Below are positions 1-40,649 of a stretch of 64,000 nucleotides of DNA, piece after piece. Positions within the stretch are counted from its first letter, which is position 1. Each line of letters starts with the position of its first letter. A program made the translations under genes and the position numbers. Below the pieces are notes generated by a model. The model was given only the letters and a program-made list of their open reading frames with translations. It did not search any database and was not told the DNA's origin. Location: assembly GCA_025603075.1 (NCBI GenBank), contig MU626298.1:62001-126000 (forward strand). Direction: 5' to 3'. The stretch comes from Neoconidiobolus thromboides FSU 785. Lineage: Eukaryota; Fungi; Entomophthoromycota.

Positions 1-272
1 AAATCTTTGTAAAGCTTTTATAGAGAAAGGATAATTCTAAAAATAAGTAAAATAAATAGCTAAAGGACATATTATAAAAACAATACAAAGAAAGTGTCTT
101 AATACTCAGTATAAATAAACCATATGTGCAAAATTATGTATAATATTGGGACAGAATTATTATTTTATGATATAAACGTAAAAAATAAAAGTAGAAAAAT
201 TATTCTGATATGGTTTTATTCTATTATTCATAGCTATTAAATGATAAACATTACAAATTGATCATTAAGTCA

Positions 273-1535
273 TTATAGTTCTATTAAATTTAATTTTGGG
301 ATGCTCTTTAGCCTCCTATAGGCACCTAAAGAGGTTACAGGATCAATACGAGTAACAAGCAGTATTAGGGTAGTAGGTAGATATTCAATTTCTGACAGTG
401 CATGTTGAAGAGTAAGACAGCTAACATTAATTAATTCAAGGTTTGGAAATAACTTGATAAAAGTTAATAGCTTGCCAATTGTAGTGTTGAAATTATTAAT
501 TGAAATTTTTTTTACATATTTACATTTATAAAAATCCAAATTCAAATAATTAAGATTAATTTCATTTAAAGCTATTTTACTAATATGAAGCATTTGGATA
601 TTTGGCAATCCTTGAATCCCTTTCAAGACTTCTTTTTTGAATTTTTTAATATGTATTTCTTTTAATGCTGGAGACTTAAAAAATTCATAACTAAGTAGAC
701 ATCCAGAGTTAGAGTACCCAAGTGAAGTAATATTACTTCCCTCAATAAATTTTATATTATCGTTGTCATTGAAAAAATTACGTGACAAATCCCTTAACTG
801 TATACTCTTGAGCTTTTTTAGGTCCCCAAAACTTTGAATACCTACTCCATTCTCAAACTTTCCGCTAATTGATAGTTCCAAATTTGAATTGAAATTCAAC
901 TTTGGATTTAGTTCAGCAGTTGTAAAAAAGCTCTTTGAAGCTAATAGTTCTAATTTTTCTAATTTGTTAAATTTTGATTTGATAATATCTAATCCGTCAA
1001 GATTAAAAAAAAGTTCTCTGCAAGCAATCTCGAGTGATCTTAGTTTGTTTGGATTTAAATGCTTAACAACATCTTTAATACTTTCACTATTTACACCAAT
1101 TATAATTATTTCCATCTGGCTTAAATAATTACTAAAACACTCTAAAATGTTTGCAACTTCACAGAAATCTATAGATAATTTCGTTAACTTTGGTAGTTCA
1201 ATATTAATATTAGATGGAATTGTATCATAACTTTGGTAAAATGCTATAATATTAATACACTTTAAATTGAGGCAGTTCTTTATAAATCCAATATTTTGAT
1301 CATCTAAAAGTAGCTCTTTCATCAATTTGCCATTTTCTTGAATAAACTTTACTTGTAACTCATCAAATCTTCCATCACTATAAAGAGAATAAGCTAAATT
1401 AGATCTGATGACCCGCTTTATTATACTGAATAAATATTTACTCAAAAAGCTAAGATCAATTAACTCTTCTGGTCTAATTAGTTGAAACACTCTTTCTAAT
1501 ACGATATCTGGTAAATAGTCGAACTGTATTTTCAT
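273..1535 (-). CDS. F-box / leucine-rich-repeat (RNI-like) protein, intronless
   Basis: The 420-aa ORF begins with an F-box-like motif (FDYLPDIVLERVFQLIRPEELIDLSFLSKYL). LxxLxL repeats follow (LPKLTKLSI, LEKLELL, LKKLKSIQL, LPNIQMLHI, FPNLELINV). Confidence 0.8.
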   Translation of the reverse strand: MKIQFDYLPDIVLERVFQLIRPEELIDLSFLSKYLFSIIKRVIRSNLAYSLYSDGRFDELQVKFIQENGKLMKELLLDDQNIGFIKNCLNLKCINIIAFYQSYDTIPSNINIELPKLTKLSIDFCEVANILECFSNYLSQMEIIIIGVNSESIKDVVKHLNPNKLRSLEIACRELFFNLDGLDIIKSKFNKLEKLELLASKSFFTTAELNPKLNFNSNLELSISGKFENGVGIQSFGDLKKLKSIQLRDLSRNFFNDNDNIKFIEGSNITSLGYSNSGCLLSYEFFKSPALKEIHIKKFKKEVLKGIQGLPNIQMLHISKIALNEINLNYLNLDFYKCKYVKKISINNFNTTIGKLLTFIKLFPNLELINVSCLTLQHALSEIEYLPTTLILLVTRIDPVTSLGAYRRLKSIPKLNLIEL

Positions 1536-2010: not shown

Positions 2011-3924
2011 ATGCAGCTCAAAATACTAGAATATGAAGCTACAACAGCTGGGATATGCAAGAGGAAGGCAAAAACGAAGAAAAGAGCCTTAATAGAGGAT
2101 ATGAATGCTAGAATGACCGAATTGGATGCTACATTTGATCATCTAGTTCTTTATTTTAACCAGGTCAGCTCGATTTCAATACGGAGCAATTCAACTGAAT
2201 ATAATGCGCAAGATCTATTGAACTTAATTAAATTGAAGAATTATTTACAATGGATAATTAATCAATTAAGACAAATACAACATGCTAAATCAAACTCAAA
2301 ACTTCATCTTTTAAATCAAAAATGTATAGCGTTGACGGAATCCGAAATACAAAGCTTCGATATATTACTAAACGATTATTTCAAATTCAATGGAAGATAT
2401 ATCTATGACTTAAGAAATCGAGCAGGCCGTGGGGCTGAGCACGTGGGTATAGTATTAAAAAGTATGGATTTTGGAACTTTGCTACAGAGTGGCTTAAATG
2501 CACTTGAGTGTCGACTGTATGACACTGGACTCTATTTTAGTAGAGAAGAGGTACTCACTATATTAACAACTAAAGAACCAAACTTCCAATCTCATGCAAT
2601 GGTGGCCTCTTTTTGTGTATTTTATTTATCTCTTAATGATCCTGGGTTTCTGACTATGTTCAAAAAAAGCTATTATGAAGCGTGTAAATCCATTTATCAA
2701 GTTTATAATGAAGTTAGCTTTGTAAATTTGAAAAGCTTGATGGTGTTGACATCATTGACATTTTATGAATCAGATACTGCATTGCTAAAAAAGATTTCAA
2801 TGCCCTTATTAAATATGGCGTATTCATTAGGGCTGAACAAAAGGATTGAAAATAGGTTATTGGTGGATCAAAATGAGGATGTAGAACTTTATTTACATAA
2901 AAGGATAACATGGAATTGTATAAGAGCATTTTTTGTCACGAATAATATGCTGTTATCGTCTCTACCTTCAGTCGGGGATTTTGAAGTCAAAGGATTGGAG
3001 TTTGAGCAGTTGCGAGCTTTGATTCAAAGCCATTCAGTGGATACTTGGTTACTGAATTTTTTAGATTGCTTTCGCATTCAGTTACACGAAATTGTTATTG
3101 TACTGTCAAACCATATGAAGAACATTAAAAGAAGTTATAAACAATTAGAGGTTATAACCTACCATCAGGCTAGACTACCAATAGAAATTTATAATAAGAT
3201 GCAAAACACACTAAAAGTCTACTTCATACCTTCCATCCGATTCCTAAGAAAAGAGCTTAATGAGATGAATCAAGGGAGTATTACCATCACTAAATACTTT
3301 TGTCAGTTTAAAAATCAAGGTTGCAAAATTCATCCTACTTTTCATCAGTTTAAAGAAAGCGTTTTAATTTATTATTTACAAATCATTTTGATTTATCCGT
3401 TAATTAATTATCATCCACAGCCTATTGATTTGACAACAGAGGAACTACTCATATTATCAGAAGCTGCTATTCGAATGTTTCATTTACTTCAAGCAAATAC
3501 ATTTATCTATTTAAATCAGGTTTATCTCAGTTCTTCTCAAAACCATAATGAAAAGTCATTTCAACAACTTAAAGAATATCTAGCCACTTGTTTCCCACCG
3601 ATTGCAACTGACGAATTCGAGGCTATGATTTACTTAAATGTAGCTTCGTTACAATTTGATTGTTATCTGTATCCATTGTTTACTTTTCTATTACTTTTAT
3701 CTTCAAATCAATCATGCTTATTATCAGACATAAGCAAAGAATATAAACAAAATATTAAACATAAAATTATTCAAATCCTTAAAGTCTTAAAAATTATTAA
3801 CCATATCAAAAACCCCAAAGCGCAATTCGACATTACTCATGTGATTGATAAGATTCTAAAGTTCAGCAAGTACTTTCCATTGCAACAAGAGGATGGGATT
3901 GAGTGGGAGGAGTATCTAAATTAA
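2011..3924 (+). CDS. Fungal transcription-factor-like protein (middle-homology-region type) with no visible Zn2Cys6 finger; paralog A
   Basis: 637-aa intronless ORF with a basic N-terminus, a short coiled coil (RMTELDATF) and MHR-like motifs (LKSLMVL..MAYSLGLNK..RITWNCI). It shares blocks with the 3863..5773 ORF. Confidence 0.6.
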   Translation: MQLKILEYEATTAGICKRKAKTKKRALIEDMNARMTELDATFDHLVLYFNQVSSISIRSNSTEYNAQDLLNLIKLKNYLQWIINQLRQIQHAKSNSKLHLLNQKCIALTESEIQSFDILLNDYFKFNGRYIYDLRNRAGRGAEHVGIVLKSMDFGTLLQSGLNALECRLYDTGLYFSREEVLTILTTKEPNFQSHAMVASFCVFYLSLNDPGFLTMFKKSYYEACKSIYQVYNEVSFVNLKSLMVLTSLTFYESDTALLKKISMPLLNMAYSLGLNKRIENRLLVDQNEDVELYLHKRITWNCIRAFFVTNNMLLSSLPSVGDFEVKGLEFEQLRALIQSHSVDTWLLNFLDCFRIQLHEIVIVLSNHMKNIKRSYKQLEVITYHQARLPIEIYNKMQNTLKVYFIPSIRFLRKELNEMNQGSITITKYFCQFKNQGCKIHPTFHQFKESVLIYYLQIILIYPLINYHPQPIDLTTEELLILSEAAIRMFHLLQANTFIYLNQVYLSSSQNHNEKSFQQLKEYLATCFPPIATDEFEAMIYLNVASLQFDCYLYPLFTFLLLLSSNQSCLLSDISKEYKQNIKHKIIQILKVLKIINHIKNPKAQFDITHVIDKILKFSKYFPLQQEDGIEWEEYLN

Positions 3925-5773
3925 ATCTATATTGGATTTCCTTAGTAAACTCATCAGACAATTCAAACTTAGCAATTGAGTTTTTAATGGTAGCGTAAAT
4001 TGGAGCCATATTAAAGGTGCTTTGAGCACCTTGTAAATCAACTAAAAGTTGGATGATGGATATAATTTCAAGTATACAATGTTGAAAATACCGAATCTTT
4101 TCCAAAGAGAAGAGAGAGTTTAATTGATACTCTTTAACCGAAATGGCTATTAAAAAGATGTGGAATGCGTGTAAAAGAGAATCCAATTGAATTGTCTTAA
4201 AGATGAGTTGAGTTAAGTGGATAGACAGTCGAGTGTGAATTGAATTCTGTTGGCGGTTTAAATAAAATTGAATATTGTGAATTAGATTATTAGTTTTTGA
4301 GTGTGAATTTAGTCGATTTACTACTTGTTGAAAATAGTTGTAAATTATTATTAAATAAATGGTGTGTATTTTGATAGCTACTTCAATCAATATAAGTACA
4401 TTTTTATTAGTAATAAAATCAGGGGTAGGTGCTGTGATAATGCCAGGAGTAATGATATAAATTTGAATCATGTATATTAAAAGGCTATTTTTAATACTAT
4501 GGTAATAAATTAATGAATCAACAGTAGTGTCTTTAAAACGACATAAACAATTATCCAAGTTTTTAACCTTATATTTTAACTTCAATTGATAATCTAAATA
4601 ATTAACTGATGGTATAAAATAATTTGATAATATTATTTGTATTCTTTCAATATTATAATTCTTTTGATTTAAATTATATTGAGCCGTTAACTCGTGATCA
4701 ATATCACTGCAAATGATTAATAGCATTTCTTGAATATGCAATCGAACCAAAGAAGCATTATAGTTCAAATCGTTGATATATTGATTATTTAACTGATATA
4801 AACTATTCAGTTTCAAATTATATTCACTCAGCCGTATATTTAAACATTTATCCATCAAAAACTCTTGATTAGTAAAATAGAATATAATCATACTGTTCCA
4901 TACTTTCCATTTTTTAATAATCAATTCGCTTTCACTCTCTGAGCTCATTTCCAACTGTGATAAATGAACTTGGTCCAACTGCAAGGCATAAGCCATCCTA
5001 ACAGCAATTGGAAACAATTTCCGAGTTACTTTAATATCTCCTTCGTTACACGCCATCTCATTACATAACATCAACATTCTCAATGTATCAAATCCGACCT
5101 GATCAAAACTCTGATACATAAGCTTACATGCTTGTCCATAAACCATTTTAAATATAGATTGAAACTGTACATTATCATAATGGTATTGATTATAGCATCC
5201 AAATACTGCCAAAGTAGTATAGTTTGCAAAAGTAGCCTTTTTTTGGTATAAATTGGTTAATAACTCATCAGGCTCAAACTGAAGTCCTGAGCCTTGAAAT
5301 AGGAAGCGATAATGATGTAGACCAGACTCAAGATAAGTCCCATAATCAAAGCAGCTGTTCTTGACATCTATGTGCTCCCCGCTTCTTCCGCTACGCGTTC
5401 TTAATGTCATTATATTATCTATATTTTCAGTTGTATATGTTGTTAGTAAGCTATCTATATTAGTTATATACTTTTGCTGTTCTGAAGTAATCTCACTATT
5501 GGTATGGGTATTTAGCTGATTTATTATCCATATTAGATAGTCTTTGATCTGCTTTAAGTGTGAGAAATTAGATTGAATTGTAGCTTGAGAGGTAGAAGTG
5601 GTAAATATTATAGTTTGATATTGAGCTAACTTTTGTAGTGTTTGCTTTAATTCGGTTTCTAAGGCAGTTAGGCGATATCCAAGGAATTTGATATTAACTT
5701 TTTTAGTTGTTATAGATCTTAGTTTGTCTTTTTGGATATCATGGATGTACCTTTTGATTTTTAAAGGTTTCAT
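3863..5773 (-). CDS. Fungal transcription-factor-like protein with no Zn2Cys6 finger; paralog B, convergent with and overlapping paralog A
   Basis: 636-aa intronless ORF with RLTALETEL, DYLIWIINQL, LRTRSGRSGEH, DYGTYLESGL and MAYALQLDQ. These align by eye with paralog A (NYLQWIINQL, LRNRAGRGAEH, DFGTLLQSGL, MAYSLGLNK). Confidence 0.6.
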   Translation of the reverse strand: MKPLKIKRYIHDIQKDKLRSITTKKVNIKFLGYRLTALETELKQTLQKLAQYQTIIFTTSTSQATIQSNFSHLKQIKDYLIWIINQLNTHTNSEITSEQQKYITNIDSLLTTYTTENIDNIMTLRTRSGRSGEHIDVKNSCFDYGTYLESGLHHYRFLFQGSGLQFEPDELLTNLYQKKATFANYTTLAVFGCYNQYHYDNVQFQSIFKMVYGQACKLMYQSFDQVGFDTLRMLMLCNEMACNEGDIKVTRKLFPIAVRMAYALQLDQVHLSQLEMSSESESELIIKKWKVWNSMIIFYFTNQEFLMDKCLNIRLSEYNLKLNSLYQLNNQYINDLNYNASLVRLHIQEMLLIICSDIDHELTAQYNLNQKNYNIERIQIILSNYFIPSVNYLDYQLKLKYKVKNLDNCLCRFKDTTVDSLIYYHSIKNSLLIYMIQIYIITPGIITAPTPDFITNKNVLILIEVAIKIHTIYLIIIYNYFQQVVNRLNSHSKTNNLIHNIQFYLNRQQNSIHTRLSIHLTQLIFKTIQLDSLLHAFHIFLIAISVKEYQLNSLFSLEKIRYFQHCILEIISIIQLLVDLQGAQSTFNMAPIYATIKNSIAKFELSDEFTKEIQYRFNLDTPPTQSHPLVAMESTC

Positions 5774-7406: not shown

Positions 7407-7858
7407 AAATAGGACGGATTAAACCTGAGTTTTATTAATATAGTTGATAAACAATAGTAACTTGAAAGTTTTTTAAATATTTATTATTTATCACTAGTTC
7501 TAGTAAATTATTTGAAATAGCTAATTTTCGTATATAAAACATTGCACGTATAAATATTTCAACGCATATTAAAATTATTATATTCGAAAAAATGTCAATT
7601 TATGCTTAAGTATGAAATATTATAATACACTGATTGTTTTGATTTATTCAAATTATGTTTAAAATTGATCTGAAATTGTATTATTAATTAACTATGTATC
7701 CAATTCTTGTAATTTTATTACTTCAAAGCATCAAGTAATGCTATTAATGATTATGATCCAGTACTGGGAAAAACTTATCAATATGCCAGCTCTTTTTCCT
7801 ACATAGATAAAACTCTTATTACTTCTCTTGCTTGAGTAATTTGGATTTTCCGTTGATG

Positions 7859-7965
7859 ATATGGGGATATATTTTTGTGTTTAAGAGTTTTACTAACAAA
7901 TTTTCCGCTTAAACAGCGTTTAAAAAATGGAAGAAATAATGAAGTCAAAAAAGACATCCCCATAT
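7859..7965 (+). mobile_element. MITE family copy 1
   Basis: ATAT-GGGGATAT...ACATCCCC-ATAT with the family internal sequence. Confidence 0.85.
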
Positions 7966-8336
7966 TCTAAAATGATCCTAAACAACAAAGCAAGTTTATC
8001 TTAATTCAAATCGGTATTCCAGCTGAAAACCATTTTTGATGATACAAGTTTTTTTTTCTTTGGGACTTAGTCGTTCCAAACTGGAAAATAAGCAGTTATT
8101 GAAAGCCTTCTTTAATTATTTCACTACATATCAAAGCCTCCATTGTCCTTTATATAGTTCTTAATGTGTTGAGATTTTTATTATAATAGATCTAGTTTGG
8201 GCTACATATTTTCAAATATCAAAATTTTCATCAGTATTATTTTCCAATACGTCATCTTTTGCAAACAAAAACCTGCTTTTCTTTAGCACAAAAAATTCTT
8301 TGGTATCTTTCAACTTTTATTTGATTTCATTTTTAC

Positions 8337-9014
8337 ATGCTTGTACGCTTACTTAAACACTTTCCTAGAGTATCTTTTTTAACTAAATTTCAACCCATTA
8401 CCTTGTTATCAATTCGAAAAATGAGTGATGATAATTATATGAAAATGTTAAATAGTAACAATAATTTTGAGTTTAAAGAAACAACCGATTCAATTAGTAA
8501 TAAAAATGATAAATTTAGCGATATTAAAGAAGCCAAATGGTTAAATGGATTACTAAAAAAAGAAAAAGAGATTTCTGTTTCTAATGAAGACGATTTAGGC
8601 TTAAAAAACATCCTAGGATATTTAACTAAAGTATCTAATGGAGTAACCTATTATTCAGAAGCGGACTTTGAATTTGAAAAATTTAGTTTGTTAAATTTAA
8701 GATTAAATCAACTTCCAACAGAAATCGAGTTTTTGAAATTGGTTAAAGAAAAAGCTGGTAATGAAACTGAAAATTTGGAGCAATTTGATGTGAAAAAACA
8801 AAGTTTACAACAGTTTATTGATAAGTCTACAGAGGATGAAGAATTGACTGAATTGTTTGACAAATTAAAAGAGATGAGTAGTGAGGAAAATTTGGAAATT
8901 GCTGTTTATACATTAAATGATAAACAATCCGTTTATAGCTATCATTTTATATCAATGTTGATTAAAGAAGAAGAAGCTATTGTTGGTTTAGTTACTTTAG
9001 AGGTACAGAGTTAG
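8337..9014 (+). CDS. Nuclease A inhibitor (NuiA)-like protein with a predicted mitochondrial presequence
   Basis: NILGYLTKVSNGVTYYSEADFEFEKF resembles cyanobacterial NuiA EILEQLKQASDGLLFMSESEYPFEVF (recalled from memory). The C-terminus GLVTLEVQS* resembles GISTKVVET*. Residues 1-28 are rich in Arg/Lys/Leu/Ser and contain no Asp or Glu. Confidence 0.7.
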   Translation: MLVRLLKHFPRVSFLTKFQPITLLSIRKMSDDNYMKMLNSNNNFEFKETTDSISNKNDKFSDIKEAKWLNGLLKKEKEISVSNEDDLGLKNILGYLTKVSNGVTYYSEADFEFEKFSLLNLRLNQLPTEIEFLKLVKEKAGNETENLEQFDVKKQSLQQFIDKSTEDEELTELFDKLKEMSSEENLEIAVYTLNDKQSVYSYHFISMLIKEEEAIVGLVTLEVQS

Positions 9015-9207: not shown

Positions 9208-9284
9208 ATTTATTATTTTTAGTTATAATCAGATAACAAGCATATATAATACTATAAATTAAGCATTTATTCATAATGATTAAC

Positions 9285-9933
9285 CTAATTTTGTTTACGG
9301 AAGAGATAAGCAGCCCCTACACCAATAGCAGCTACTAAACCACCCACCATAAATAAGCCCATTAAGCCTTCTATAAAAGTATTATATTAAAACCCATTAA
9401 TTTCAATAATCATTTAATAAAATTTTACCTCTAGATACTCTTTTTTCAATTAAATTTTTTAATGCTAAAGCTTGAATATTATGAGGTTCTTGATCCAAAA
9501 TATAGGAATTCATCACTCTAGCTTCTGTATAATTGCCTAATTTATAATTCCCTAAAGCTATATAATATTGACACTCACGACGTCTGTCTGGGTATTCGAC
9601 AATGATACCTGATTTTTTGATTAGTTATAAGACTAAATTACAAAAGGTAAAGATAACTATAATAAAAACTTACTATTTAATATCTGAATACCTTCTTGTA
9701 CAAATTGTCTTTCACGACATTTAATAAGTCCCCAAGCTAAATTAAATTTGGTTTGTACATTGGCATCTTTACCTTCACTAGCGTATTGAGTACGAAGGAC
9801 CTAAAAGTTTAAAGTTTTAGTTAAATATTATAAATCAAATAGAAATTATTCTTTTTTGACTTACATTTAGTTCTGCTTCAGTGAGTGGATCTTCAGCTTC
9901 AGCTACAAAGGGTAAACGATCTCCAAGGGTCAT
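9285..9933 (-). CDS. FIS1: Mitochondrial fission protein Fis1 (multi-exon)
   Basis: Spliced translation includes LPFVAEAEDPLTEAELN, VLRTQYASEG, QTKFNLAWGLIK, YPDRRRECQYYIALGNYKLGNYTEAR and EPHNIQALALK, then a tail anchor GLMGLFMVGGLVAAIGVGAAYLFRKQN*. It is absent from the ORF track because the exons are short. Confidence 0.93.
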
Positions 9934-10359
9934 ATTTCTTGTATTGATAAATTTATTTATAAAAGTGATTCAACAACTAATTTAAGTTAATTCCTTTTTT
10001 ATAACCCTACTCAATCATGACGTAGGTATTTTTCAAGAAATCTATAAGCATTAGGTTTGGTTTGCAAATTAGTGAAAATAATGAGCAAATGGTTGGATTT
10101 GTTGGAATTACTAAATTCTCTGATTCTAGGCTCCTTTTTTTTGGTCAAGACTCCAAATGAAAAGAACTAAATCAATTTTAACAAAAAAATCATAGTAATA
10201 GAAAAAATCATATCTTATTTAACTACTAAGGTTCATAAAAATGGGCTTGGATTTTTCGATTGGAATTATATGAAACGTGGGCTAAAAAGTTTATCGGAGA
10301 TAATACATCGGAGGTGACTATAATCAAAAATATATTAAGCTTCCGCTTAATTAATGTTT

Positions 10360-12003: not shown

Positions 12004-15000
12004 TTACCCTTGATTTTGTAATACTTTTTCGATACATCTATTAATCAATTCTTTATAAGGTTGCATATCTCTATTTAATTTATTTGCCACTTGATCTCTT
12101 ACTTGTTTTTTAGTAATTGCCATTAAATCCGCATTTTCTAAAATAATAGCTACTTCATCCATAATTTCGACTTCTAATTGTGTAGCAACGATTGGGCTAT
12201 TAGATGTAGTGTCATTTGGTGTATCATAACCTAATAACGGTTTTGGAGATTCGGTGCCTGGAACATAATGATGACCCAAATACCCTTGTTGATTTGTATT
12301 ATCAAACATACCACTACCGGATCGATTATTGACATTCCTTTGGTAAGGATTCGTTATATTATTATTATTATTAGTTGGCATTGGCATCATTTGATAAGAT
12401 TCATTTTGTATGTTATTATTATATTGACTCATTGTATTTTTATTTATTATTGTATTATTATTATTATTATTGTTATAAAATTCGGTACTTGGATTATTTA
12501 TATTTAATCTTGATCCTGGACGAGAAGCAATATTATTTGGTAACATATTGCCAATAATCATATTAGAAGATCTTGGACCTGAATTCATATTTTGATAAAT
12601 AGATTGAGTTGGATTTTGCAATTGATTAGGCTGATATAGCATTGAGTTTGTATTATTGATTGGTGGATAAAAACCAGATTGTGTTTTATTTTGTAAGTTT
12701 GATTTTTTACTTTCATTAGAATATTCCGTTCCTGCTTCCCAGATCTCTTCTTCATATTCGGTCCATTTCTTAGTTGGTATTGTTTTAATATCGAATTTAC
12801 CTTCATCTGCTCCAGATGCAACTATTACTTTTTTACGTTTTCCATTTTCACCAACTACAATTCTAGTTGATCCCCATGAAAAATCATCAAAATGCCAAAA
12901 GGAATAAATTGGTATAAAAAAGGCAAAGATTGGCAATGCTAATAAATAAACAATCATCCAACCAATGTGTTGCCATTGCCTTCTTAATATAAATACGGTC
13001 ATTTGTAATACATAAGGTGCTAATATAAATATCAAAGATATAATAGGTATATTACTTGAATCAGTAATTAATCGATATAATAAATAACCCAAATAACCCA
13101 ATGTAGCAGGCATTATAATTGTTGATAATAAATCCATAAATACAACAAATCTCATTGAAAAACAACAAAACCCACATAACCTCGGTAAAAATACTAGTTC
13201 TAATAAATTATGAACAGTTGAATTGATCCATCTTCTTCTTTGAGACAATAAAACATCCCAAGTATCTGGTGCATTAGTTAAACACATAGCATCTGGTGTA
13301 AATGTCATTTTTTGAAATGGAAAATGTTTTAACATTAAAGTAGTTAAATAACGATCTTCTCCTAAATGTAGCAAATTCTTTTTATGTAATGTATCTACTC
13401 GATTTTCGGAATAATCTGTAATTAATACATTATGTACTAATAAAGGCTGACCTGCTGGTGTCCTTAATCGATACATACAAAAACAACCTGGTAAACAAGT
13501 AACAGAACCAAATAAAGATTCGAATGCTTTAGCTAAATGATGGGATATATAATATTCATAAACTTGGATCATGGTAGCCCAAGTATCTTTTTCATTAGCT
13601 AATGCCGTTTCTCCACATAATCCCATAATCTTAGTATCATGTAACATAGCAGATACTAACCGATTTAATGAATCCGGCATAACTACAGTATCTGCATCTA
13701 CCATTAATACATATTCATAAAAATGTGGATCTACACCAATTACATTTTTAATTTGATGATACATTTCTAACTCTAAAGGTACCATTGGATGATCATAATG
13801 AACTTTATTAAAGAACTTCATTAAGATTAGTTGTGAATCTCTTTTTCCTCTGTTTCCTGGTTTAGCTCTTTCTGTAGGTTTACCTACTTTAACAACAACC
13901 AAATAAGGTACTACATGACCATAACATTCATATAAACCAGTATAAACTTTAGCCATATTATGTTGTTTTGAACCTTCCCCTAAAGAATGAAAAGATAATG
14001 CTTCAGGTTCATTATTGGGATCCGATCCTAATATATCCAATACAATTCTTGGTGTAGGTTTATCATTACCACCTCCCATTACCATACCATCAGCTACAAT
14101 AAATAATAATTTACGTTTATCATCGTATTTTAATACGGCTAATGAATCAATTGTTTTCTTTAAAGATTCTTCGCCTTCAGTATAACAAGGTACATTAATA
14201 ATAACAAATCGATCATGATCTTCAGGTTCTGGACGAGAACCTAATTGCAGAGATGCTAAAAATTTAACAAATAAAATAGCAAATAAAAAGATAGATAAAG
14301 CTAATAAGATATATTGTGCAAATACGCAACGGAAAGATTGTCGGTCATCTAAAACTCCTGAATAAAATACATTATTTAAACACTGCATTGTTAATGCTTT
14401 AGTTTGTGCATCATTTTGATATAGCTTATTGAATGCTAAAGTAATATCTTTCCCAGATCCAACACGAACCAAATCAATAAAATTAGGGTCCATAAAATCA
14501 TAACCTGAAGATGAAGGAGATTGACCAGGTGGTGTTAAAGTATATAAATTGCCAGTAACATAAGAATTTAAATCATATATTTTTTGATTTAATTCTACCC
14601 AAAAATAACCAGTTGCTGCTTTTTTAGATAATGTAGTTGGATCTACAGCTAAATCACCTGCTTTCATTGTTAATCTCATTCTTTGCATGGCATTTTGATA
14701 CCAGTCTGGTTGATAATAATCTGATCCTCGATAATATCGATGATCATGATATTGGGCATTTTTATCTTGAGCACCTAAAGTTGTATTTTGTAAAGAAACT
14801 GTTTCATCAATAGAGCTACCATCATATCGATTACATAAGGAACTTAGTTGCTGTGGAAATAAATAAGACACGTCATTACCAGCATAAACTTTAATTAACT
14901 GAGTTTGTTGAGTACCATAATGAGTAGATAAACCTTGTAAATTAAAGACTTGTCCATAAATGGATACCAATGGTTTACTTGCTGTATTAAAAGAATTCAC

Positions 15001-17751
15001 TTCATAACTTGAAAAAATTTGACGAGTTGGGCAGATTAAAGGATTAATACCAACAATAAATAAAACTACCAAGGCACATAAAAAGAAAATAAGTAAGCAT
15101 AAACTAACTTTTTCACGCCATGCCATACGAACTTCTTTTAATTTCATTCTTCCACAACAGGATAAAAAGGAAGTAGGCACCCACCAAGTCATTGCCCAAG
15201 TAAAACAAATCCAAGATTTTCTCACTTTTGTTTTTGGTATATCTTCTTCTTCTTCTTCTTCTTCTTCGATTGCATTTAAATTTAATTGATTTTCTGCTTT
15301 AGTTAAATGAATTTCCCCATCTTGAGATTGAGAAAATTTACTACCTTTTTCATAAAAAGATAATTGATCTTCATTTAAATTATCATCATCTGAGTAATAA
15401 GATTGATTGTCATTTAAAAACCCAGTAGGAGAATCTTTATTTAGAGCATTAACTCCTTGTGTTTCTATTACTTTTAAATTATCTTCTAAATCTCTCCAAA
15501 CACCATCACAAAGATAAGTAAATTTATGTCCAATTGCCATATGTTCCGTACCCCAACCAAAACTTTCTCTTGAATTAACTAAAACTGATAAAGGATCATT
15601 TTCATCCACTTCAATTCCCATAGCTATTAAAATTGAAGAATATCTTGTAACAAATTCATTATGCTGATAACAAACAGTATATTCAATTTCTTTACGTTCG
15701 GTCATGTAAACTAATCTATATCTTTCAATTTGTTGTAATATAATTTTACTATCAATATTATCAAACATTCGGTTTTGATTCGAATTAAAACATAATACAA
15801 ACCAAGCTTCAGTATTATCAAAAGTATCAAATAATTCATCTAATCCAGTTTGGAATTGAGCTAATGAACCTTGAGGTTTATCTTTGCTATTTTCTTTTAA
15901 ATTTGCTTCTTTTTTCTTTTTCATACTTGGTTTACGTAAAGGTACACTTGGTTGTTGTGCAGCTACAATAGCATTCCCATTTTTGGGATTCACTTCAGTA
16001 TAAACCGCATCCGAAGTAAATAATCCAGCTACAAATGGATTACCAACTAAAGCATCTGGACCACCACGAAATGTCTGAACAAAATCAGCACCAATAGATG
16101 CTCGATTTTGTTCCATAAAACCAGCTACTGAATAAGTTATTGGTTGAGTAAAGTGATGAACACAAAATTGGTTATTGCTACGATCTAATTGAAATAAATC
16201 TTGATGAGAATGATTTTTTGCTAAAGAAGTCATCAAGGAGGCATCAGTAGCTGGTCCCTTAACTTTATTGGCTAATTTATCCATAATAGCAACAATACCC
16301 GAACTTGGTTTACCAAGTAGTTGAATTAATGTATGATTATCAGGATATTCTACAATTGGAATAGTAATACCATCTTCTTGATAAGAAGTATTAGAAGCTT
16401 CAAATACTTGAAAACAACAATAATTAAATAATCTTTCATTAGCATAATTAACACAAAACTGTTCAAAGTTACAAGAAGAATCAGAATAATAAAAACCAGG
16501 TAAATCTAATAAACCAATAAAATTAGCTTGTATATCTTGACAATATTTAGTATTAATATGTTCAATCATCCAAGAAAATAATAAAGAATATAAACATTTA
16601 ACTAAATCATCTCGTTGAATTTTGGCATCTTTAGCATCTAAAAATATAGTACACATTTCTTTTTTAATCATTTGCGTTTTATATGTTAGTAAAGCTTCTA
16701 ATGTATTGGGTAATAAACCTAAAAAATCAGCACAAATATCTAAAATATCGATATTTTTTATCAAGGCAGGTTCATTATTATTGTTTCCATGATTAACAAA
16801 ATTCAAATTTCCTAAATGTAATATTGAAGCTAATAATTGAAAGATTTGACTTTGTGAACGCTGATGAAAACCTAATACTTTTAAAGATTTTTTAAGTTCA
16901 CTAAAACTTTGTTTCAATTCTTCTTGATTGAAATCATTATTAGTATGAGCCAAATAATTAAAACTCACAGCATCACCAAGTTTAAAATGTTCTTTTTCTT
17001 GAAGGTCAACACCAGCTAACAGCATATAAAACACTTTAAAATTACTTTCATTTCTAGGTACATTAACTACTCGGTTTTTAGCTAATAAATAATTTAAAAA
17101 TTTTAAACCATAAACTCGTCCCTTTTTGTCTAATTGTAATTCTAAATATTTGCCAACTTTGGAAGCATTTGGATTTTGAAATGTCTTACAACTACCAAAC
17201 GCTTGGAAAACAGCATCCGCTTCTTGAGATGCTTCTAATAACCGTGCTTCTTTACGATGCGTTTTTCGTAATTCAAAATAACAACGTAAAAATTGTTGAA
17301 ATAAATGCGATTTACCAGAGCCAGAATCACCGCTATTAGAAAGAAAAAGAATTAGTTTTAGTTACCAACAATAAAATATAAGAGTTTACTTAAAAATCAA
17401 GGTTTGATCAATACCTGATCGTTTTAAATGAAAATAAATTACTTTACACAATTGAAAGATATGAGGTTCTAATTCTTGTTGATGATTGACATTATTATTA
17501 TTTTTTAAATAATAACCCATCACATCTTCATGAAAGCAAGATAAATCATTATATGGATTAATATATAATAATAAGCGTGCTCCTACTTTAGTGAAATATT
17601 GTCGATCTTTGAAGCGTAAGTTAAGCGCTTGGTTTAAATACACATCCGTCTTGGGACTCAGAAAAGTTAAGTCTTGAATTTTACCTAGATCATCAATTGA
17701 GGACTTATCATCTTCGGCAGGGTTTGGGAAGTTAGATAAGTGCTTAGCCAT
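12004..17751 (-). CDS. Chitin synthase with N-terminal myosin motor-like domain (class V / myosin-17 type), cytochrome-b5-like domains and C-terminal DEK_C
   Basis: Exon 1 is 17390..17751, the intron is 17333..17389 and the long exon runs to 12004. Motifs: P-loop GDSGSGKS, AFG..KT..NPNASKVGK, DLPGF; GT2 motifs CLPGCF, LGEDRYLT and QRRRW; DEK_C-like ILENADLMAITKKQVRDQV. Confidence 0.95.
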
Positions 17752-25170: not shown

Positions 25171-26406
25171 TTAACATTTTGGTGCAAAATCCAACTTATC
25201 AAACCTTGAGTGTAACTTACGATCTAGATCAGGAATAGTAGCTAGAGAGCACGAAGGATCTTCCATAGCAAATATAGTGTTGATATTATTACATACTTTA
25301 ATCTCGAATCTATCATTAACAATATTAGATTGGAACAATTCCAATGAGTGATGGAAATACCCAAACAACCTTGGAGGTGCATGGGGGACTGGATCGTTAT
25401 AATTAACCATTCTGTAGTAAGTCAAGCCCAACTGATTCACATAGCTAGCATATTCCTTGTTTCCCAGCCTTGGTTGACCAAATGTGAATACTTTGATTCT
25501 TTCTTTTGGTAAATTCAATTTATAATAAGCTTTTACTGCACTCAAACCAGCGATTGCACCACCCAAACTATGGCCTGTAAAAATTAAAGTATACCCTTGA
25601 TCTTGTCTCAACAATTCCTGTAAACTTTGTACCATTGATTCAAACAAAGAATTGGTCATAGTAAGGAAACCATTGTGAACTTTTAAATTTCTTACTTTAA
25701 ATAAATTGTTATCAAAATCTAAAAAGTCATTCAAAACAATATTAATATCTTGAATTAAATTGATTTCCGTTTCTGTGCCTCGAAAACTTATTATGATTTC
25801 TTTTCTACCTTCATTGACCACAATTACACCTTTAGTTTGTAAGTTTGAATTACTTAGGACTTTATGAACCCTGTTTCCACTACCTAAAGACTGGCAGTAT
25901 CGACATTGCCAGTTAAATAATAGATCGTCGTTACATTTTGCTATACCTGCGTATTGGCCATAGTAGTTTATATTGTTCAATAAGTCAGGTGCTGCTAACT
26001 CATTAGCTACCTGTTCCTCTTTTGGTTGGATTGGGTGTTCTATCATCTCAGTAAGAAATGGAGGTAGATTTATTGTGTTGTTTGCTAACAACTCCTTCAA
26101 TACATTTGTATCTAAGGTTTTAGTTTGATTTAATTTTTCTATAATATTACTGTCAATAAGCTGTTTTATAAAATCACTGTCTTTGAGTTTGTCAACTATT
26201 TCAGTGTTTTTGATTTCTTCAGCTATTCCATTGTCTTTAATGTCTTTGATTATTTCACTGTTTTTGATGTCTTCTATAAACTTGTTGTGCTGAAGCTGAT
26301 CGATTATTTTTTCAGGATCGAATGAGTCACTGCTATTCACTGCTCCATTATTAAGGAAGGATAAAATGACACTTAATAGAAAAAATAATATAGAGTTCAA
26401 TAACAT
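25171..26406 (-). CDS. Secreted class 3 lipase with a repetitive pro-region
   Basis: Signal-peptide-like N-terminus, lid region IIISFRGT, VHNGF, nucleophile elbow GHSLGG, FTFGQPRLGN and RMVNYNDPVPHAPP. Confidence 0.92.
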   Translation of the reverse strand: MLLNSILFFLLSVILSFLNNGAVNSSDSFDPEKIIDQLQHNKFIEDIKNSEIIKDIKDNGIAEEIKNTEIVDKLKDSDFIKQLIDSNIIEKLNQTKTLDTNVLKELLANNTINLPPFLTEMIEHPIQPKEEQVANELAAPDLLNNINYYGQYAGIAKCNDDLLFNWQCRYCQSLGSGNRVHKVLSNSNLQTKGVIVVNEGRKEIIISFRGTETEINLIQDINIVLNDFLDFDNNLFKVRNLKVHNGFLTMTNSLFESMVQSLQELLRQDQGYTLIFTGHSLGGAIAGLSAVKAYYKLNLPKERIKVFTFGQPRLGNKEYASYVNQLGLTYYRMVNYNDPVPHAPPRLFGYFHHSLELFQSNIVNDRFEIKVCNNINTIFAMEDPSCSLATIPDLDRKLHSRFDKLDFAPKC

Positions 26407-30770: not shown

Positions 30771-33035
30771 ATGCCAAGTTTATTTAATAAGGATAGCTTA
30801 CCAGCTAGTGAGAACGAAATAGATTTTAGTGATTTGGAAAGAGAATATGCCTTAGAATTTGAAAACAACTTTGACAACTTGATCGTAGTGGACGGATTAC
30901 CAAAAGTAGACGAGAGCAAATATGACAAACTTATAACAGTTGTTCAAAAGATCTTCAAAAAATATGGTACTTTGGTTCAAGATAATATTGTTATGCCAAT
31001 GTCCGAAAAAGATGGTAAAAATACCTCTGAAGGGTAAACATATTTTCTATTTTCTATTTGCTATATTAAATCGCTTTTTAGTTTCCTTTTCTTGGAGTTT
31101 GAAAACGCTGAACAAGCAGCACTTGCTATCAAACATGTTAACGGCTATCCTTTTGATAAAAAACACACTTTAGCTGTAAATAAATTTACCGACGTAGAAA
31201 CCTATAGCGCTTTAAGTAATGACTACATTGAGCCAGAACTTGAAGAGTATGTTGAAAAAGAACATTTATTAAGCCATCTTTCAGATAGCCTTGCAAGAGA
31301 TCAATTTGTTACTTTGATTGGTGACAACACATCTATTGTATGGAACAACCGTACAGAAGCTCCAGAATCTCTATTCAGCCGTAAATTATGGACTGAAACT
31401 TATACCCAATGGTCTCCACAAGGTACTTATTTATGTAGTCTCCATCCTCAAGGTGTAGCTCTTTGGGGAGGTGCTAGTTGGAACAAAATTGTACGTTTCG
31501 TACATCCAGGTGTCAAATTAATTGATTTTTCACCAAGTGAACGTTATATTGTTACTTGGTCCAATGATCCTATAGTGGCTGGGTCGGGCGCTGCTCCAGG
31601 TGCTACTTCTCCTTTTGGTGAAGAAAATGAAGGTCATCAAATTTGTATATGGGATGTCAAAACTGGTGTACTTTTAAGATCTTTCCCTAACACTCAACAA
31701 ACTGTCCCTGATAGTGACTCCCCTACTAAGATCACCTGGCCTGTATTCAAATGGTCTCCTAATGATGTTTACTTTGCACGTGTTATACCTGGTCAAATGC
31801 TTTCAATTTATTCTGCTCCAGATATGGGCTTAGTAGATAAAAAATCCCTCAAAGTTGAAGGTATTATTGATTTTGAGTGGGCACCAGCACATAAAAAGGT
31901 AGATAAGAAAGGAGAAAGTAAAACTAAAGAAGGAGATGATATGCTTGCTTATTGGACCCCAGAGTTGGCCAATACACCAGCAAGAGTAACATTAATCTCT
32001 GTACCATCTAAAGAGATACTAAGGACTAAGAATCTTTTCAACGTAAGCGACTGTAAACTCCACTGGCATAAGAATGGTGAGCTCTTAGCAGTAAGAGTGA
32101 ATCGATTTACCAAGTCTAAAAAATCAACCTTTTCAAATGTTGAAATCTTCAGAGTTAGAGAAAAGGACATACCAGTTGAAGTTATTGAGATTAAAGACAC
32201 TATCTTACAATTCGCTTGGGAACCATCTAATAATCAACGTTTCGGTTTCATTGCTACTGGTGATGCTCCTCCAACTGCTCCTACCGCTCCTGGTATGGCT
32301 CCACCTACTCCAAAAACAAATGTCAGCTTTTATGGCCGTGAAATTAAAAAGGGAAGCAAAAATACAGTATCAAAGGATGAATTTAAATTGATTACTACCC
32401 TTGATAAAAAGACTGTAAATAGTTTAGTATGGTCACCAAAAGGACGTCACTTCGTTCTTGCCACCCTTCGTTCCAAGACAATGAGTAGTATTGAGTTCTG
32501 GGATATTGACTTTGAACTTGAAAGCAAAAAGGACAGTAGTTCCAACTTGCATATGATTGGTTCTCCTGAACATTATGGACTTACCGATATCGAATGGGAT
32601 CCTACTGGTCGCTATGTTATTACCAGTTCTTCAATGTGGCACCATGAAATAGAAAATGGTTTCTGTATTTGGGACTTTAAGGGTACTCCCTTATATAAGA
32701 AACCAATTGAAAACTTCAAACAAATCTTATGGCGCCCAAGACCTAAGTCTCTGTTATCTATGGAACAAAAACGTAAAGTGCGTAAGAACCTCAACACCTA
32801 CTCCAAACAATTTGATGAAGAGGATGCTATGTCCCGTAACGCTATTTCAGCTGCTGAACTTGCTCATCGCAAACGCCTTAATGATGAATGGAAGGCATGG
32901 CGTAGTATTATTGAAAAACAACTTGCCGATAAGAGGATGGATAGCTCTGCAACTCAACTTGATGATAAAGAAGAAGAAATTGAGGAATGGGTCGAAGAGG
33001 TTGTTGAAGAATTTGAAGAGGTTGTTGAGGAATAG
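30771..33035 (+). CDS. PRT1: Translation initiation factor eIF3 subunit B (Prt1)
   Basis: RRM (DNLIVVDGLPKV..GFLFLEF across intron 31034..31081), beta-propeller motifs WSPQGTYL, WSPKGRHF and EWDPTGRY, then FKQILWRPRP and an acidic C-terminus. Confidence 0.97.
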
Positions 33036-39932: not shown

Positions 39933-40649
39933 TTAATTAAAATAAAAAATGGCTACTAAAAATAAACTAAAGCTGAAACTAGTCCAGTTTTTAAACACAT
40001 GCCTATGGTCTGAAGTAACAGTAGCTGTAATAGCGGTGTAAGTAGAAACACTAGGGGAATTATCTCCGCCGCTCTTAGTATTATCCCCCATCAGATCTTT
40101 AACTAAGACTTTCTTAATGGTTCCACAGATCAACCTTCTTTTATCAGCAGGATAATGAATAACTATGGACTTATTAATCACGGATAATTTCCCTTTAATT
40201 TTAATCTGATCATCAATAATAGTAAAACGAGAGTTATTACGGCCTTTTAGTTTACCATGTTTACCAGAAAGATCCCCGTGCTGACATGCTTCTACTTTGG
40301 CTGAAGTACATTTATAGTTTTCATTTTTATCATTTGGGTTTTTATTCGTTGGATCCCAATGACCACCTGCACTGTCACAATCATCATTTTTGATTGGTAG
40401 TTGATGTATATGATAAGGGTATTCTTGGCTTTTATCGGAGTCAATGAAATGATTTACAATGAAATCTAATTTGACACTGCCGTTTTTAAATTCGCTCATC
40501 AATATAGAAGCACTTATTGGGTTTTTATAAAATTCCACGTACCCTAAATAGTCTTCATTTTCTTGGTTTTCAACGGATTGAGGTAATATATATTGGATGT
40601 ATAGAAAAAGTAGTAAAGCAAGTCTTATTGGGTTCATTTGTTTTAACAT
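39933..40649 (-). CDS. Secreted, probably GPI-anchored Cu-only superoxide dismutase (SOD5-like)
   Basis: Signal peptide; Cu-ligand motifs YHIH, GGHWDP and SIVIH; CQHGDLSGKHG; a short loop before RLICGTI; S/T-rich linker and hydrophobic C-terminal tail. Confidence 0.88.
   Translation of the reverse strand: MLKQMNPIRLALLLFLYIQYILPQSVENQENEDYLGYVEFYKNPISASILMSEFKNGSVKLDFIVNHFIDSDKSQEYPYHIHQLPIKNDDCDSAGGHWDPTNKNPNDKNENYKCTSAKVEACQHGDLSGKHGKLKGRNNSRFTIIDDQIKIKGKLSVINKSIVIHYPADKRRLICGTIKKVLVKDLMGDNTKSGGDNSPSVSTYTAITATVTSDHRHVFKNWTSFSFSLFLVAIFYFN

What the first reader, a model, noticed from the sequence alone, without database searches (positions are those of the whole stretch)
8337..9014. Fungal NuiA-like nuclease inhibitor with a mitochondrial presequence: a candidate inhibitor of Nuc1/EndoG
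Seen: an intronless ORF whose C-terminal ~140 aa match cyanobacterial NuiA at both functional ends as I recall them. The match includes YSEADF vs MSESEY, and GLVTLEVQS* vs GISTKVVET* ending at the same register. The first 28 aa are basic, hydroxylated and acid-free, ending in IRKMS. Known: NuiA inhibits the beta-beta-alpha-metal nuclease NucA through Glu24 and the C-terminal Thr, which bridges the active-site Mg2+. Mitochondrial Nuc1/EndoG belongs to the same nuclease family. Inference: a bacterial-type immunity protein reused to restrain a mitochondrial or secreted nuclease. No cognate nuclease gene is in this window.
Basis: partly seen in the sequence, partly recalled or inferred. Interest (0 to 1): 0.82.

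Follow-up and report, generated by a model that had tools for sequence, protein, structure and literature searches.

The report
Fungal NuiA-like protein, possible mitochondrial leader
This intronless fungal gene encodes a real relative of the cyanobacterial nuclease inhibitor NuiA and belongs to a fungal family already in Pfam, but its mitochondrial-looking leader is missing from the main transcript in most RNA data and no target nuclease has been identified.

Summary
The ORF at 8337-9014 (+) is real: 225 aa, intronless, transcribed, with 5 of 5 strain SNPs synonymous.

**NuiA homology is solid.**
- Pfam PF23151 NuiA_2 scores 39.6 bits (cut-off 27).
- A family profile finds PDB NuiA first, and hhalign against real bacterial NuiA gives E 1.2e-6.
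- The predicted fold matches NuiA chain 2o3b_B at Z 10.5.
YSEADF aligns with MSESEY, so E108 corresponds to NuiA Glu24. GLVTLEVQS* aligns with GISTKVVET* to the last residue.

**It is not new as a family.** NuiA_2 is a catalogued, mostly ascomycete family that includes S. pombe C21B10.02. I found no paper on any eukaryotic member.

**The presequence is only partly supported.**
- For: the 28-aa extension is unusual for this DNA (1 of 2080 ATGs; amphipathic helix in the top 0.1%). The Entomophthora muscae homolog has an analogous 29-aa extension.
- Against: all homologs share a conserved start at our M29. RNA contigs from three of four runs begin at 8414-8446, downstream of M1.
- The main product is therefore probably the leaderless, cytosolic form, with at most a minor mitochondrial isoform.

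No nuclease gene lies in the window, so Nuc1/EndoG as target remains inference. The scan had also noted the two in-frame starts on this window (s1-063491).

The parts
8337..9014 (+). Whole ORF, 225 codons plus stop; intronless NuiA-like gene
   Evidence: RNA contigs span it without joints. 5 of 5 strain SNPs are synonymous. It is present in NCBI nr as a 225-aa protein.
8337..8420 (+). 28-codon N-terminal extension (M1-K28): basic, acid-free and amphipathic, with R at -2 before M29. Candidate mitochondrial presequence, present only in a long mRNA.
   Evidence: Composition. Only 1 of 2080 ATGs in the window has such an upstream stretch. The hydrophobic moment of residues 1-11 is 0.86, in the top 0.1%. 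Analogous extension in E. muscae P0004. RNA contigs of X2-X4 do not cover it.
8421..8423 (+). Conserved internal start codon M29 in a good context (A at -3). It is the start of all homologs and of the Pfam NuiA_2 profile.
8400..8446 (+). Apparent major 5' end of the transcript in organism B. Contigs start at 8414, 8429 and 8446, and depth jumps more than 40-fold.
   Evidence: depth table and contig pieces
8421..8588 (+). Residues 29-84: N-terminal segment specific to the fungal family (MSDDxYLxMLN ... W68), absent from bacterial NuiA; low model confidence
8589..9011 (+). Residues 85-225: NuiA-fold core
   Evidence: VIA-align Z 10.5, model 85..225 = 2o3b_B 1..135. Foldseek E 5.2e-5. hhalign E 1.2e-6.
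8652..8678 (+). Motif Y106-S-E108-A-D110-F-E-F-E114, aligned with NuiA M-S-E24-S-E-Y-P-F-E. E108 is the Glu24 equivalent and is invariant in the four fungal relatives.
8985..9011 (+). C-terminal G217-LVTLEVQ-S225, in register with NuiA G-ISTKVVE-T(C-terminus). The terminal Ser corresponds to the metal-bridging Thr.
   Evidence: The role of the C-terminal Thr is from PMC2790893 and PMC5587815.

Best explanation
The gene encodes a eukaryotic member of the NuiA nuclease-inhibitor superfamily (Pfam NuiA_2). It is an acidic protein of about 23 kDa (pI 4.5) whose NuiA-fold core occupies residues 85-225.

It most likely acts as a stoichiometric protein inhibitor, or guard, of a DNA/RNA-nonspecific beta-beta-alpha-metal nuclease. 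By analogy with NuiA, the acidic loop S107-E108-x-D110 would enter the active site. The free C-terminal Ser225 would ligate the catalytic Mg2+.

The main product starts at the conserved M29 and is translated from an mRNA beginning near 8400-8415. It should sit in the cytosol or nucleus, where it would neutralise mis-sorted or leaked nuclease, as NuiA does in Anabaena and EndoGI does in Drosophila.

A minor long mRNA that includes M1 could add a 28-aa amphipathic presequence. This would be cut after R27-K28 and would send a fraction of the protein into mitochondria.

Shown: the ORF, its transcription, purifying selection, homology, fold, motif conservation and the leader's composition. Inferred: inhibition, the identity of the nuclease, import and the use of two starts.
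For: Family and fold:
- Pfam NuiA_2 scores 39.6 bits over the full profile.
- The closest relatives P0002-P0004 pass the gathering score of NuiA proper, PF07924.
- PDB NuiA is the top profile hit, E 4e-4.
- hhalign gives 90.8% probability and E 1.2e-6 over 126 columns, reaching both C-termini.
- Foldseek gives E 5.2e-5 and VIA-align Z 10.5 to 2o3b_B, against 5.1 for the next chain.
- In AlphaFold DB relatives the domain ends at or within a few residues of the protein's C-terminus in 27 of 30 hits. This fits a functional free C-terminus.

Gene status:
- The mature part has 40 D/E against 23 K/R and pI 4.51.
- 5 of 5 SNPs are synonymous.

Start codons and leader:
- RNA 5' ends lie at 8414-8446 in X2-X4. 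Upstream depth is 3-5% in X2. A long contig that includes M1 is present in X1.
- M29 has A at -3, whereas M1 has T at -3.
- The leader's statistics are unusual for this DNA.
- E. muscae has an analogous leader. It is conserved with L003, where 0 of 5000 shuffles reached the observed score.

Background on the mechanism: the C-terminal Thr of NuiA bridges the catalytic metal ion (PMC2790893, PMC5587815).
Against: - No inhibition, binding or localisation data exist for any eukaryotic family member (0 papers).
- No nuclease gene is nearby, neither in the window nor in the E. muscae locus. In contrast, 9 of 20 bacterial nuiA loci have a DRGH nuclease next door.
- The second NuiA contact site (Asp75/Trp76, invariant W75 in bacteria) has no counterpart.
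- E133 of NuiA corresponds to Q224 here, and P0002 carries one extra residue after the Thr.
- NuiA-like domains also occur fused to HIT or pentapeptide-repeat domains in bacteria, so the fold is not tied to one function.
- The model's confidence is modest, with mean pLDDT 61.
Confidence: 0.45

Rival explanations
1. The 225-aa protein is the main product. It is imported into mitochondria through the 28-aa presequence, where it restrains Nuc1/EndoG.
For: - The leader is acid-free and basic. Residues 1-11 form a strongly amphipathic helix (muH 0.86, top 0.1%). It has a phi-x-x-phi-phi motif (LVRLL) and R at -2 before M29.
- The E. muscae homolog is annotated with a similar 29-aa leader.
- The X1 RNA contig 7923-8988 contains M1.
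- The NCBI annotation uses M1.
Against: - Contigs in X2, X3 and X4 start at 8414, 8429 and 8446, and depth upstream is 0-10% of the body.
- The X1 contig extends 414 nt upstream with three uATGs. It may be read-through from the same-strand SDR gene that ends at 7406.
- M1 has a poor initiation context.
- The closest relative L001/L002 has no ATG in 166 nt upstream, and L003 has GTG where E. muscae has ATG.
- The S. pombe member has no leader.
- The similarity of our leader to that of Entomophthora is not significant, p 0.04-0.3.
- A picomolar inhibitor placed together with its nuclease would simply silence it.
Confidence: 0.2
2. It is a cytosolic guard against a secreted Serratia/NucA-type nuclease of the fungus, which would be the direct analogue of the Anabaena NucA/NuiA pair, and not against mitochondrial Nuc1.
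For: - In NuiA's native system it is an intracellular inhibitor of a secreted nuclease (PMC2790893, PMC5587815).
- The main transcript encodes the leaderless form.
- An unchecked scan note reports a secreted NucA/NucB-type nuclease elsewhere in this genome (s1-062736).
- From my own knowledge, early-diverging fungi such as Cunninghamella and Syncephalastrum secrete Serratia-family nucleases.
Against: - The scan note is unverified and may refer to the unrelated Bacillus NucB family.
- This model gives no explanation for the leader-like extension.
- No linkage to any nuclease gene was seen.
Confidence: 0.2
3. It has a NuiA-like fold but another function, for example a protein-protein adaptor or chaperone, or a nucleotide or nucleic-acid mimic unrelated to nuclease control. 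The fungal family would have been recruited to a new role.
For: - The family has an extra conserved N-terminal segment of about 55 aa, absent from NuiA.
- The second NuiA interface (D75/W76) is lost.
- Bacterial NuiA domains are fused to HIT/DcpS or pentapeptide repeats.
- The fold resembles Mog1/PsbP/EagT6-type binders at Z about 5.
- There is no gene linkage to a nuclease.
Against: The residues conserved across the bacteria-fungi divide are precisely those NuiA uses in the nuclease active site: the SE.[ED][YF].FE loop and the terminal hydroxyl residue at the chain end. The domain also stays C-terminal in most relatives.
Confidence: 0.15

Closest known systems
Anabaena/Nostoc NuiA (Pfam PF07924; PDB 2O3B chain B, 1J57), inhibitor of the nonspecific nuclease NucA
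   Same: - Same alpha/beta fold: Z 10.5, with 122 of 135 residues aligned.
- Same acidic loop: S-E-x-[ED]-[YF]-x-F-E, with E108 corresponding to Glu24.
- The chain ends in register on a hydroxyl residue (S225 versus the C-terminal Thr).
- Both are acidic proteins.
   Different: - Only 19-22% identity, and below the PF07924 gathering score (18.3 versus 22.1).
- About 55 extra conserved residues precede the core, plus a 28-aa leader-like extension.
- No counterpart of the invariant D74/W75 site.
- Q replaces the penultimate E.
- No adjacent nuclease gene, whereas 9 of 20 bacterial loci have one.
- Eukaryotic host.
Pfam PF23151 NuiA_2 ('NuiA-like'), including S. pombe uncharacterized protein C21B10.02 (Q9USW0) and many Ascomycota proteins
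   Same: It scores above the gathering cut-off over the whole profile, residues 29-223 = 1-154. The S. pombe protein aligns 1-141 with our 29-225. Atlas clusters of this family are the nearest by features.
   Different: - Our protein is very divergent: exhaustive phmmer reaches only two relatives, at 31-34% identity.
- It comes from a lineage whose nearest named relative is Entomophthora.
- It carries the extra 28-aa extension that S. pombe lacks.
- No member has a published function.
Entomophthora muscae hypothetical protein DSO57_1022892 (P0004, 235 aa)
   Same: Same architecture: a basic, acid-free leader of 29 aa, then a conserved Met followed by [SA]DD.YL.MLN, then the NuiA core ending in ...GL.T..[VI]Q[ST]. 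It is also intronless.
   Different: Only 23-25% identity. The similarity between the two leaders is not above shuffles.
Drosophila EndoGI, nuclear inhibitor of mitochondrial EndoG (PDB 3ISM)
   Same: It is a possible functional analogue: a protein kept outside mitochondria that neutralises leaked EndoG, acting through the metal ion's hydration shell (PMC2790893).
   Different: The fold is unrelated (a tandem helical-repeat fold) and the origin is independent. It is known only from Drosophila species. The analogy of function is inference only.

Membership tests
Pfam PF23151 NuiA_2 (NuiA-like, fungal) | HMM score above the curated gathering score, with full-length profile coverage | tested here: met
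   39.6 bits versus 27; residues 29-223 = profile 1-154 of 154
NuiA (PF07924) | HMM score above the curated gathering score | tested here: not met
   18.3 bits versus 22.1 for this protein. Its three closest relatives do pass, at 28.3, 25.1 and 23.7 bits.
NuiA (PF07924) | NuiA alpha/beta fold | tested here: met
   Foldseek top hit 2o3b_B, E 5.2e-5. VIA-align Z 10.5, rmsd 3.1, 122 residues, next chain 5.1. The model has only pLDDT 61.
NuiA (PF07924) | Glu24-equivalent acidic residue in the conserved SESEYPFE loop | tested here: met
   E108 in YSEADFEFE aligns with the E of MSESEY. It is invariant in the four fungal relatives and in ten bacterial NuiA sequences.
NuiA (PF07924) | C-terminal hydroxyl residue at the very end of the chain (the metal-bridging Thr) | tested here: met
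   S225 is the last residue. hhalign and VIA-align both run to the last residue of both proteins. All bacterial NuiA end in ET*. P0002 has one extra residue, ending ..QTS.
NuiA (PF07924) | Second interface site Asp75/Trp76 (its role is recalled from the 2O3B paper; the invariance was tested here) | tested here: not met
   D74/W75 are nearly invariant or invariant in bacterial NuiA. They align to a gapped, W-free acidic stretch in the fungal family.
NuiA (PF07924) | Genetic linkage to a NucA-type (DRGH) nuclease gene | tested here: not met
   9 of 20 bacterial loci have a DRGH ORF beside nuiA. None is present in the 64-kb window or in the 12.7-kb E. muscae locus.
NuiA (PF07924) | Tight inhibition of a beta-beta-alpha-metal nonspecific nuclease | not testable with these tools
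   This needs biochemistry.
Mitochondrial matrix-targeting presequence | N-terminal basic, acid-free, amphipathic helix with an MPP-type Arg at -2 or -3 | tested here: met
   6 K/R and 0 D/E in 28 aa. muH 0.86 for residues 1-11, top 0.1% of open windows. R27 lies at -2 before M29. Only 1 of 2080 ATGs in the window has such an upstream stretch. No dedicated predictor was available.
Mitochondrial matrix-targeting presequence | The presequence is part of the expressed mRNA and protein | tested here: inconclusive
   One RNA contig (X1) includes M1. Contigs of X2-X4 start at 8414-8446, with 0-10% depth upstream. The contigs carry no strand information, and read-through from the upstream gene is possible.
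Mitochondrial matrix-targeting presequence | Conservation of the extension in homologs | tested here: inconclusive
   - It is present and conserved in Entomophthorales: for L003 versus L004, 0 of 5000 shuffles reached the observed score.
- L003 has GTG in place of the ATG.
- L001/L002 have an open, basic, acid-free frame but no ATG.
- S. pombe has none.
- The similarity of our leader to the others gives p 0.04-0.3.

The most novel reading that the evidence does not exclude
Fungi keep a bacterial-type NuiA inhibitor as the long-sought endogenous inhibitor of Nuc1/EndoG. In some early-diverging lineages it would be made in two forms from two starts. A leaderless cytosolic or nuclear guard would start at the conserved M29. 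A presequence-bearing mitochondrial form would start at M1. Together they would set how much EndoG activity is available for mtDNA maintenance and cell death.
Probability: 0.2. Interest if true: 0.7.

Novelty: new member of a known kind. Interest (0 to 1): 0.45.

Why it matters
Protein inhibitors of EndoG-type nucleases are known only from cyanobacteria (NuiA) and Drosophila (EndoGI). In the literature searched here, none has been described in fungi, or in most other eukaryotes.

A whole fungal family (PF23151) keeps the two active-site-directed elements of NuiA but has never been tested. This gene and its Entomophthora homolog add a leader-like extension in front of a conserved internal start.

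That makes a simple question testable: is fungal Nuc1/EndoG, or a secreted Serratia-type nuclease, held in check by a NuiA-type inhibitor, and in which compartment? If not, the gene remains an ordinary member of an uncharacterised domain family.

Tried and rejected
- **Word-index protein searches** and the exhaustive phmmer search gave only three relatives. I therefore could not collect ascomycete NuiA_2 sequences or examine their N-termini.
- **The search for related loci in metagenome contigs** found nothing.
- **A PDB search with the C-terminal 66 residues alone** did not retrieve NuiA. The C-terminal match is visible only in whole-domain profile or structure alignments.
- **Signal peptide instead of presequence:** rejected, because the extension has no hydrophobic core of 8 or more residues.
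- **The extension as a chance open frame in AT-rich DNA:** considered, then judged unlikely. An open frame of 33 codons is expected about 5% of the time from base composition, but only 1 of 2080 ATGs shows the full pattern.
- **Homology of our leader to the Entomophthora leader:** not demonstrable.
- **NCBIfam** gave nothing.
- **Organism identity:** could not be established. The cluster look-up returns only the window's own masked record. A class V/VII myosin-chitin synthase shows that it is a fungus.
- **Complex modelling with a nuclease:** not possible with the tools.

Full report
**Observation**

The ORF 8337-9014 (+) exists as described: 225 codons, ATG start, and an in-frame stop five codons upstream. 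The window has 24-32% G+C. It carries a class V/VII chitin synthase with a myosin motor head, cytochrome b5 and DEK_C domains at 12004-17034 (-), so it is fungal DNA.

RNA-derived contigs from four public runs cover the ORF without any splice joint. The neighbouring convergent gene at about 9280-9970 (called FIS1 in scan notes) shows three clean introns in the same runs, so the gene is expressed and intronless. All five differences between the window and the second strain or allele inside the ORF are third-position synonymous changes. This argues for purifying selection. The exact 225-aa protein is already in NCBI nr.

**Is it NuiA-like?**

Yes, by five independent routes.

1. Pfam NuiA_2 (PF23151, 'NuiA-like') scores 39.6 bits against a cut-off of 27 and covers the whole profile with residues 29-223. 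NuiA proper (PF07924) scores 18.3 bits, just under its cut-off of 22.1.
2. Exhaustive phmmer against 1.8 billion representatives finds only two relatives: P0002 (207 aa, soil metagenome) and P0003 (204 aa). A profile search adds P0004, a hypothetical protein of Entomophthora muscae. All three pass the gathering score of NuiA proper, so this clade bridges the two Pfam families.
3. A profile of the family finds the PDB NuiA chains 1j57 and 2o3b_B as its best hits, E 4e-4.
4. I fetched 20 real bacterial NuiA genes from Nostoc, Calothrix, Chlorogloeopsis, Acidobacteriota and others. The profile-profile alignment gives 90.8% probability and E 1.2e-6 over 126 columns, ending at the last residue of both families.
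5. An AlphaFold2 model (pLDDT 61, modest) has 2o3b_B as top Foldseek hit, E 5.2e-5. VIA-align gives Z 10.5 with model residues 85-225 on chain residues 1-135, and the next chain scores 5.1.

**The two 'functional ends'**

NuiA's M-S-E-S-E-Y-P-F-E loop is invariant in ten bacterial sequences. It aligns with Y106-S-E108-A-D-F-E-F-E114, which is invariant at S, E, D, F, F and E in the four fungal relatives.

All bacterial NuiA sequences end ...G[IL]ST.V[VI]ET*. The fungal proteins end GLVTLEVQS*, GLVTTEVQTS*, GLATAGVQT* and GLATAGIQT*.

Two papers state that the C-terminal residue (Thr) of NuiA binds the catalytic Mg2+ of NucA directly (PMC2790893, PMC5587815). That Glu24 mimics the scissile phosphate is my recollection of the 2O3B paper. 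PMC5374557 mentions an E24-D121 hydrogen bond in that complex.

In AlphaFold DB fold clusters, the NuiA-like domain ends at or within a few residues of the hit protein's C-terminus in 27 of 30 hits, whatever the length of the N-terminal part. This fits a functional free C-terminus.

Differences from NuiA:
- The invariant D74/W75 of bacterial NuiA has no counterpart.
- The penultimate E is Q here.
- About 55 conserved residues precede the core, starting MSDDxYLxMLN.

**The presequence**

*Evidence for it*
- Residues 1-28 have 6 K/R and no D/E. Residues 1-11 have a helical hydrophobic moment of 0.86, in the top 0.1% of open 28-aa windows of this DNA.
- There is an LVRLL (phi-x-x-phi-phi) motif, and R27 lies at -2 from M29.
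- Among 2080 ATGs in the window, only this one is preceded by an open, acid-free, basic 28-codon stretch with a Met at its far end.
- The E. muscae homolog has an analogous annotated leader, MFFSRLISRSLNKRYLKPIINRRYLSSQK, directly before its conserved MADD.
- That leader is conserved at protein level in the related contig L003. None of 5000 shuffles reached the observed score.

*Evidence against it as the main form*
- All homologs, the S. pombe member C21B10.02 and the Pfam profile begin at the Met equivalent to M29.
- L003 has GTG where E. muscae has ATG.
- L001/L002 have an open, basic, acid-free upstream frame, but no ATG in 166 nt.
- Our leader is not significantly similar to the others, p 0.04-0.3.
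- In runs X2, X3 and X4 the contigs begin at 8414, 8429 and 8446. Depth in the preceding bin is 5 against 207, 35 against 343, and 0 against 422.
- Only X1 has a contig (7923-8988) that includes M1. It runs 414 nt further upstream across three uATGs, up to a repeat. The upstream SDR gene is on the same strand and ends at 7406, so read-through is possible.
- M1 has T at -3, whereas M29 has A at -3.

*My reading.* The major mRNA starts near 8400 and yields the leaderless protein from M29. A minor long mRNA may yield a mitochondrial isoform, with leaky scanning also possible. This agrees with the scan's separate note on two in-frame starts (s1-063491), which I tested only in part.

**Target and mechanism**

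No Endonuclease_NS (DRGH) gene lies in the 64-kb window or in the 12.7-kb E. muscae locus. In contrast, 9 of 20 bacterial nuiA loci have a DRGH ORF of about 280 aa next door.

The nuclease is therefore unknown. Candidates are the mitochondrial Nuc1/EndoG ortholog and a secreted Serratia/NucA-type nuclease. An unchecked scan note (s1-062736) reports a secreted 'NucA/NucB-type' nuclease elsewhere in the genome.

A leaderless cytosolic form matches the logic of both known systems. NuiA is intracellular against a secreted NucA, and EndoGI is nuclear against mitochondrial EndoG (PMC2790893).

**Novelty**

The family is catalogued in Pfam as 'NuiA-like'. Atlas clusters of 247, 467 and 92 members are mostly from Ascomycota. 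This gene is a divergent new member, not a new kind.

I found no paper that mentions NuiA-like proteins, PF23151, PF07924 or SPBC21B10.02, and none describing a fungal EndoG inhibitor. The function of the eukaryotic family is therefore open and easily testable.

**Verdict**

- NuiA homology is firmly supported.
- The presequence is plausible but probably belongs to a minor isoform.
- The Nuc1 target is unproven.
- Interest is moderate.

Noticed in passing
window 7859-7963: A short repeat with very high summed RNA depth (8104 in X1, against 200-600 beside it). Contigs from all four runs break here and continue into unrelated sequence. It is probably a dispersed MITE-like element carried in many transcripts. 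A 54-aa minus-strand ORF at 7799-7963 overlaps it.
   Followed up: no
window 9280-9970 (-): The convergent neighbour (called FIS1 in scan notes) has three introns confirmed by RNA joints: 9371-9428, 9606-9670 and 9799-9862 (CT..AC on +, so GT..AG on -). Its transcript and that of the NuiA-like gene overlap or abut at their 3' ends; one X2 contig runs from 8414 into the spliced neighbour.
   Followed up: partly
window 8870-8981: In runs X3 and X4, two contig versions coexist that differ at four synonymous sites (8900, 8930, 8939, 8951), at depths of about 130-165 against 320-370. This points to two alleles or nuclear genotypes in one culture.
   Followed up: partly
window 41004-41690, 44025-44708, 49640-50323 (-): Three tandem minus-strand ORFs of about 227 aa each carry an Ion_trans_2 (K+ channel pore) domain. 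They form a local array of paralogs.
   Followed up: no
window 12004-17034 (-): A 1676-codon ORF encodes a class V/VII chitin synthase with myosin head, cytochrome b5, Chitin_synth_2 and DEK_C domains. The myosin head match starts at profile position 194, so the true start lies in an upstream exon.
   Followed up: no
window 2011-3924 (+), 3863-5773 (-), 273-1535 (-): Three long ORFs (637, 636 and 420 aa) have no Pfam match at E <= 0.001. The first two overlap tail to tail by about 60 nt.
   Followed up: no
L003:179-268 versus L004:6001-6087: The leader of the Entomophthora-type homolog is conserved at protein level in L003, but L003 has GTG where E. muscae has ATG. This could be a non-AUG start, a lost start or an assembly variant.
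   Followed up: partly
L010, L011, L014, L017, L019, L020, L023, L024, L005: In 9 of 20 bacterial nuiA loci, a DRGH-motif ORF (190-516 codons, typically about 284) lies within about 0.5 kb of nuiA, often convergent. One pair is on a Chlorogloeopsis plasmid (L020). Atlas and AFDB also show NuiA domains fused to HIT/DcpS or pentapeptide-repeat domains in bacteria.
   Followed up: partly
window 25171-26406 (-), 31092-33035 (+), 39933-40649 (-): Other recognisable genes in the window are a class 3 lipase, an eIF2A-like WD40 protein and a Cu/Zn superoxide-dismutase-like ORF.
   Followed up: no
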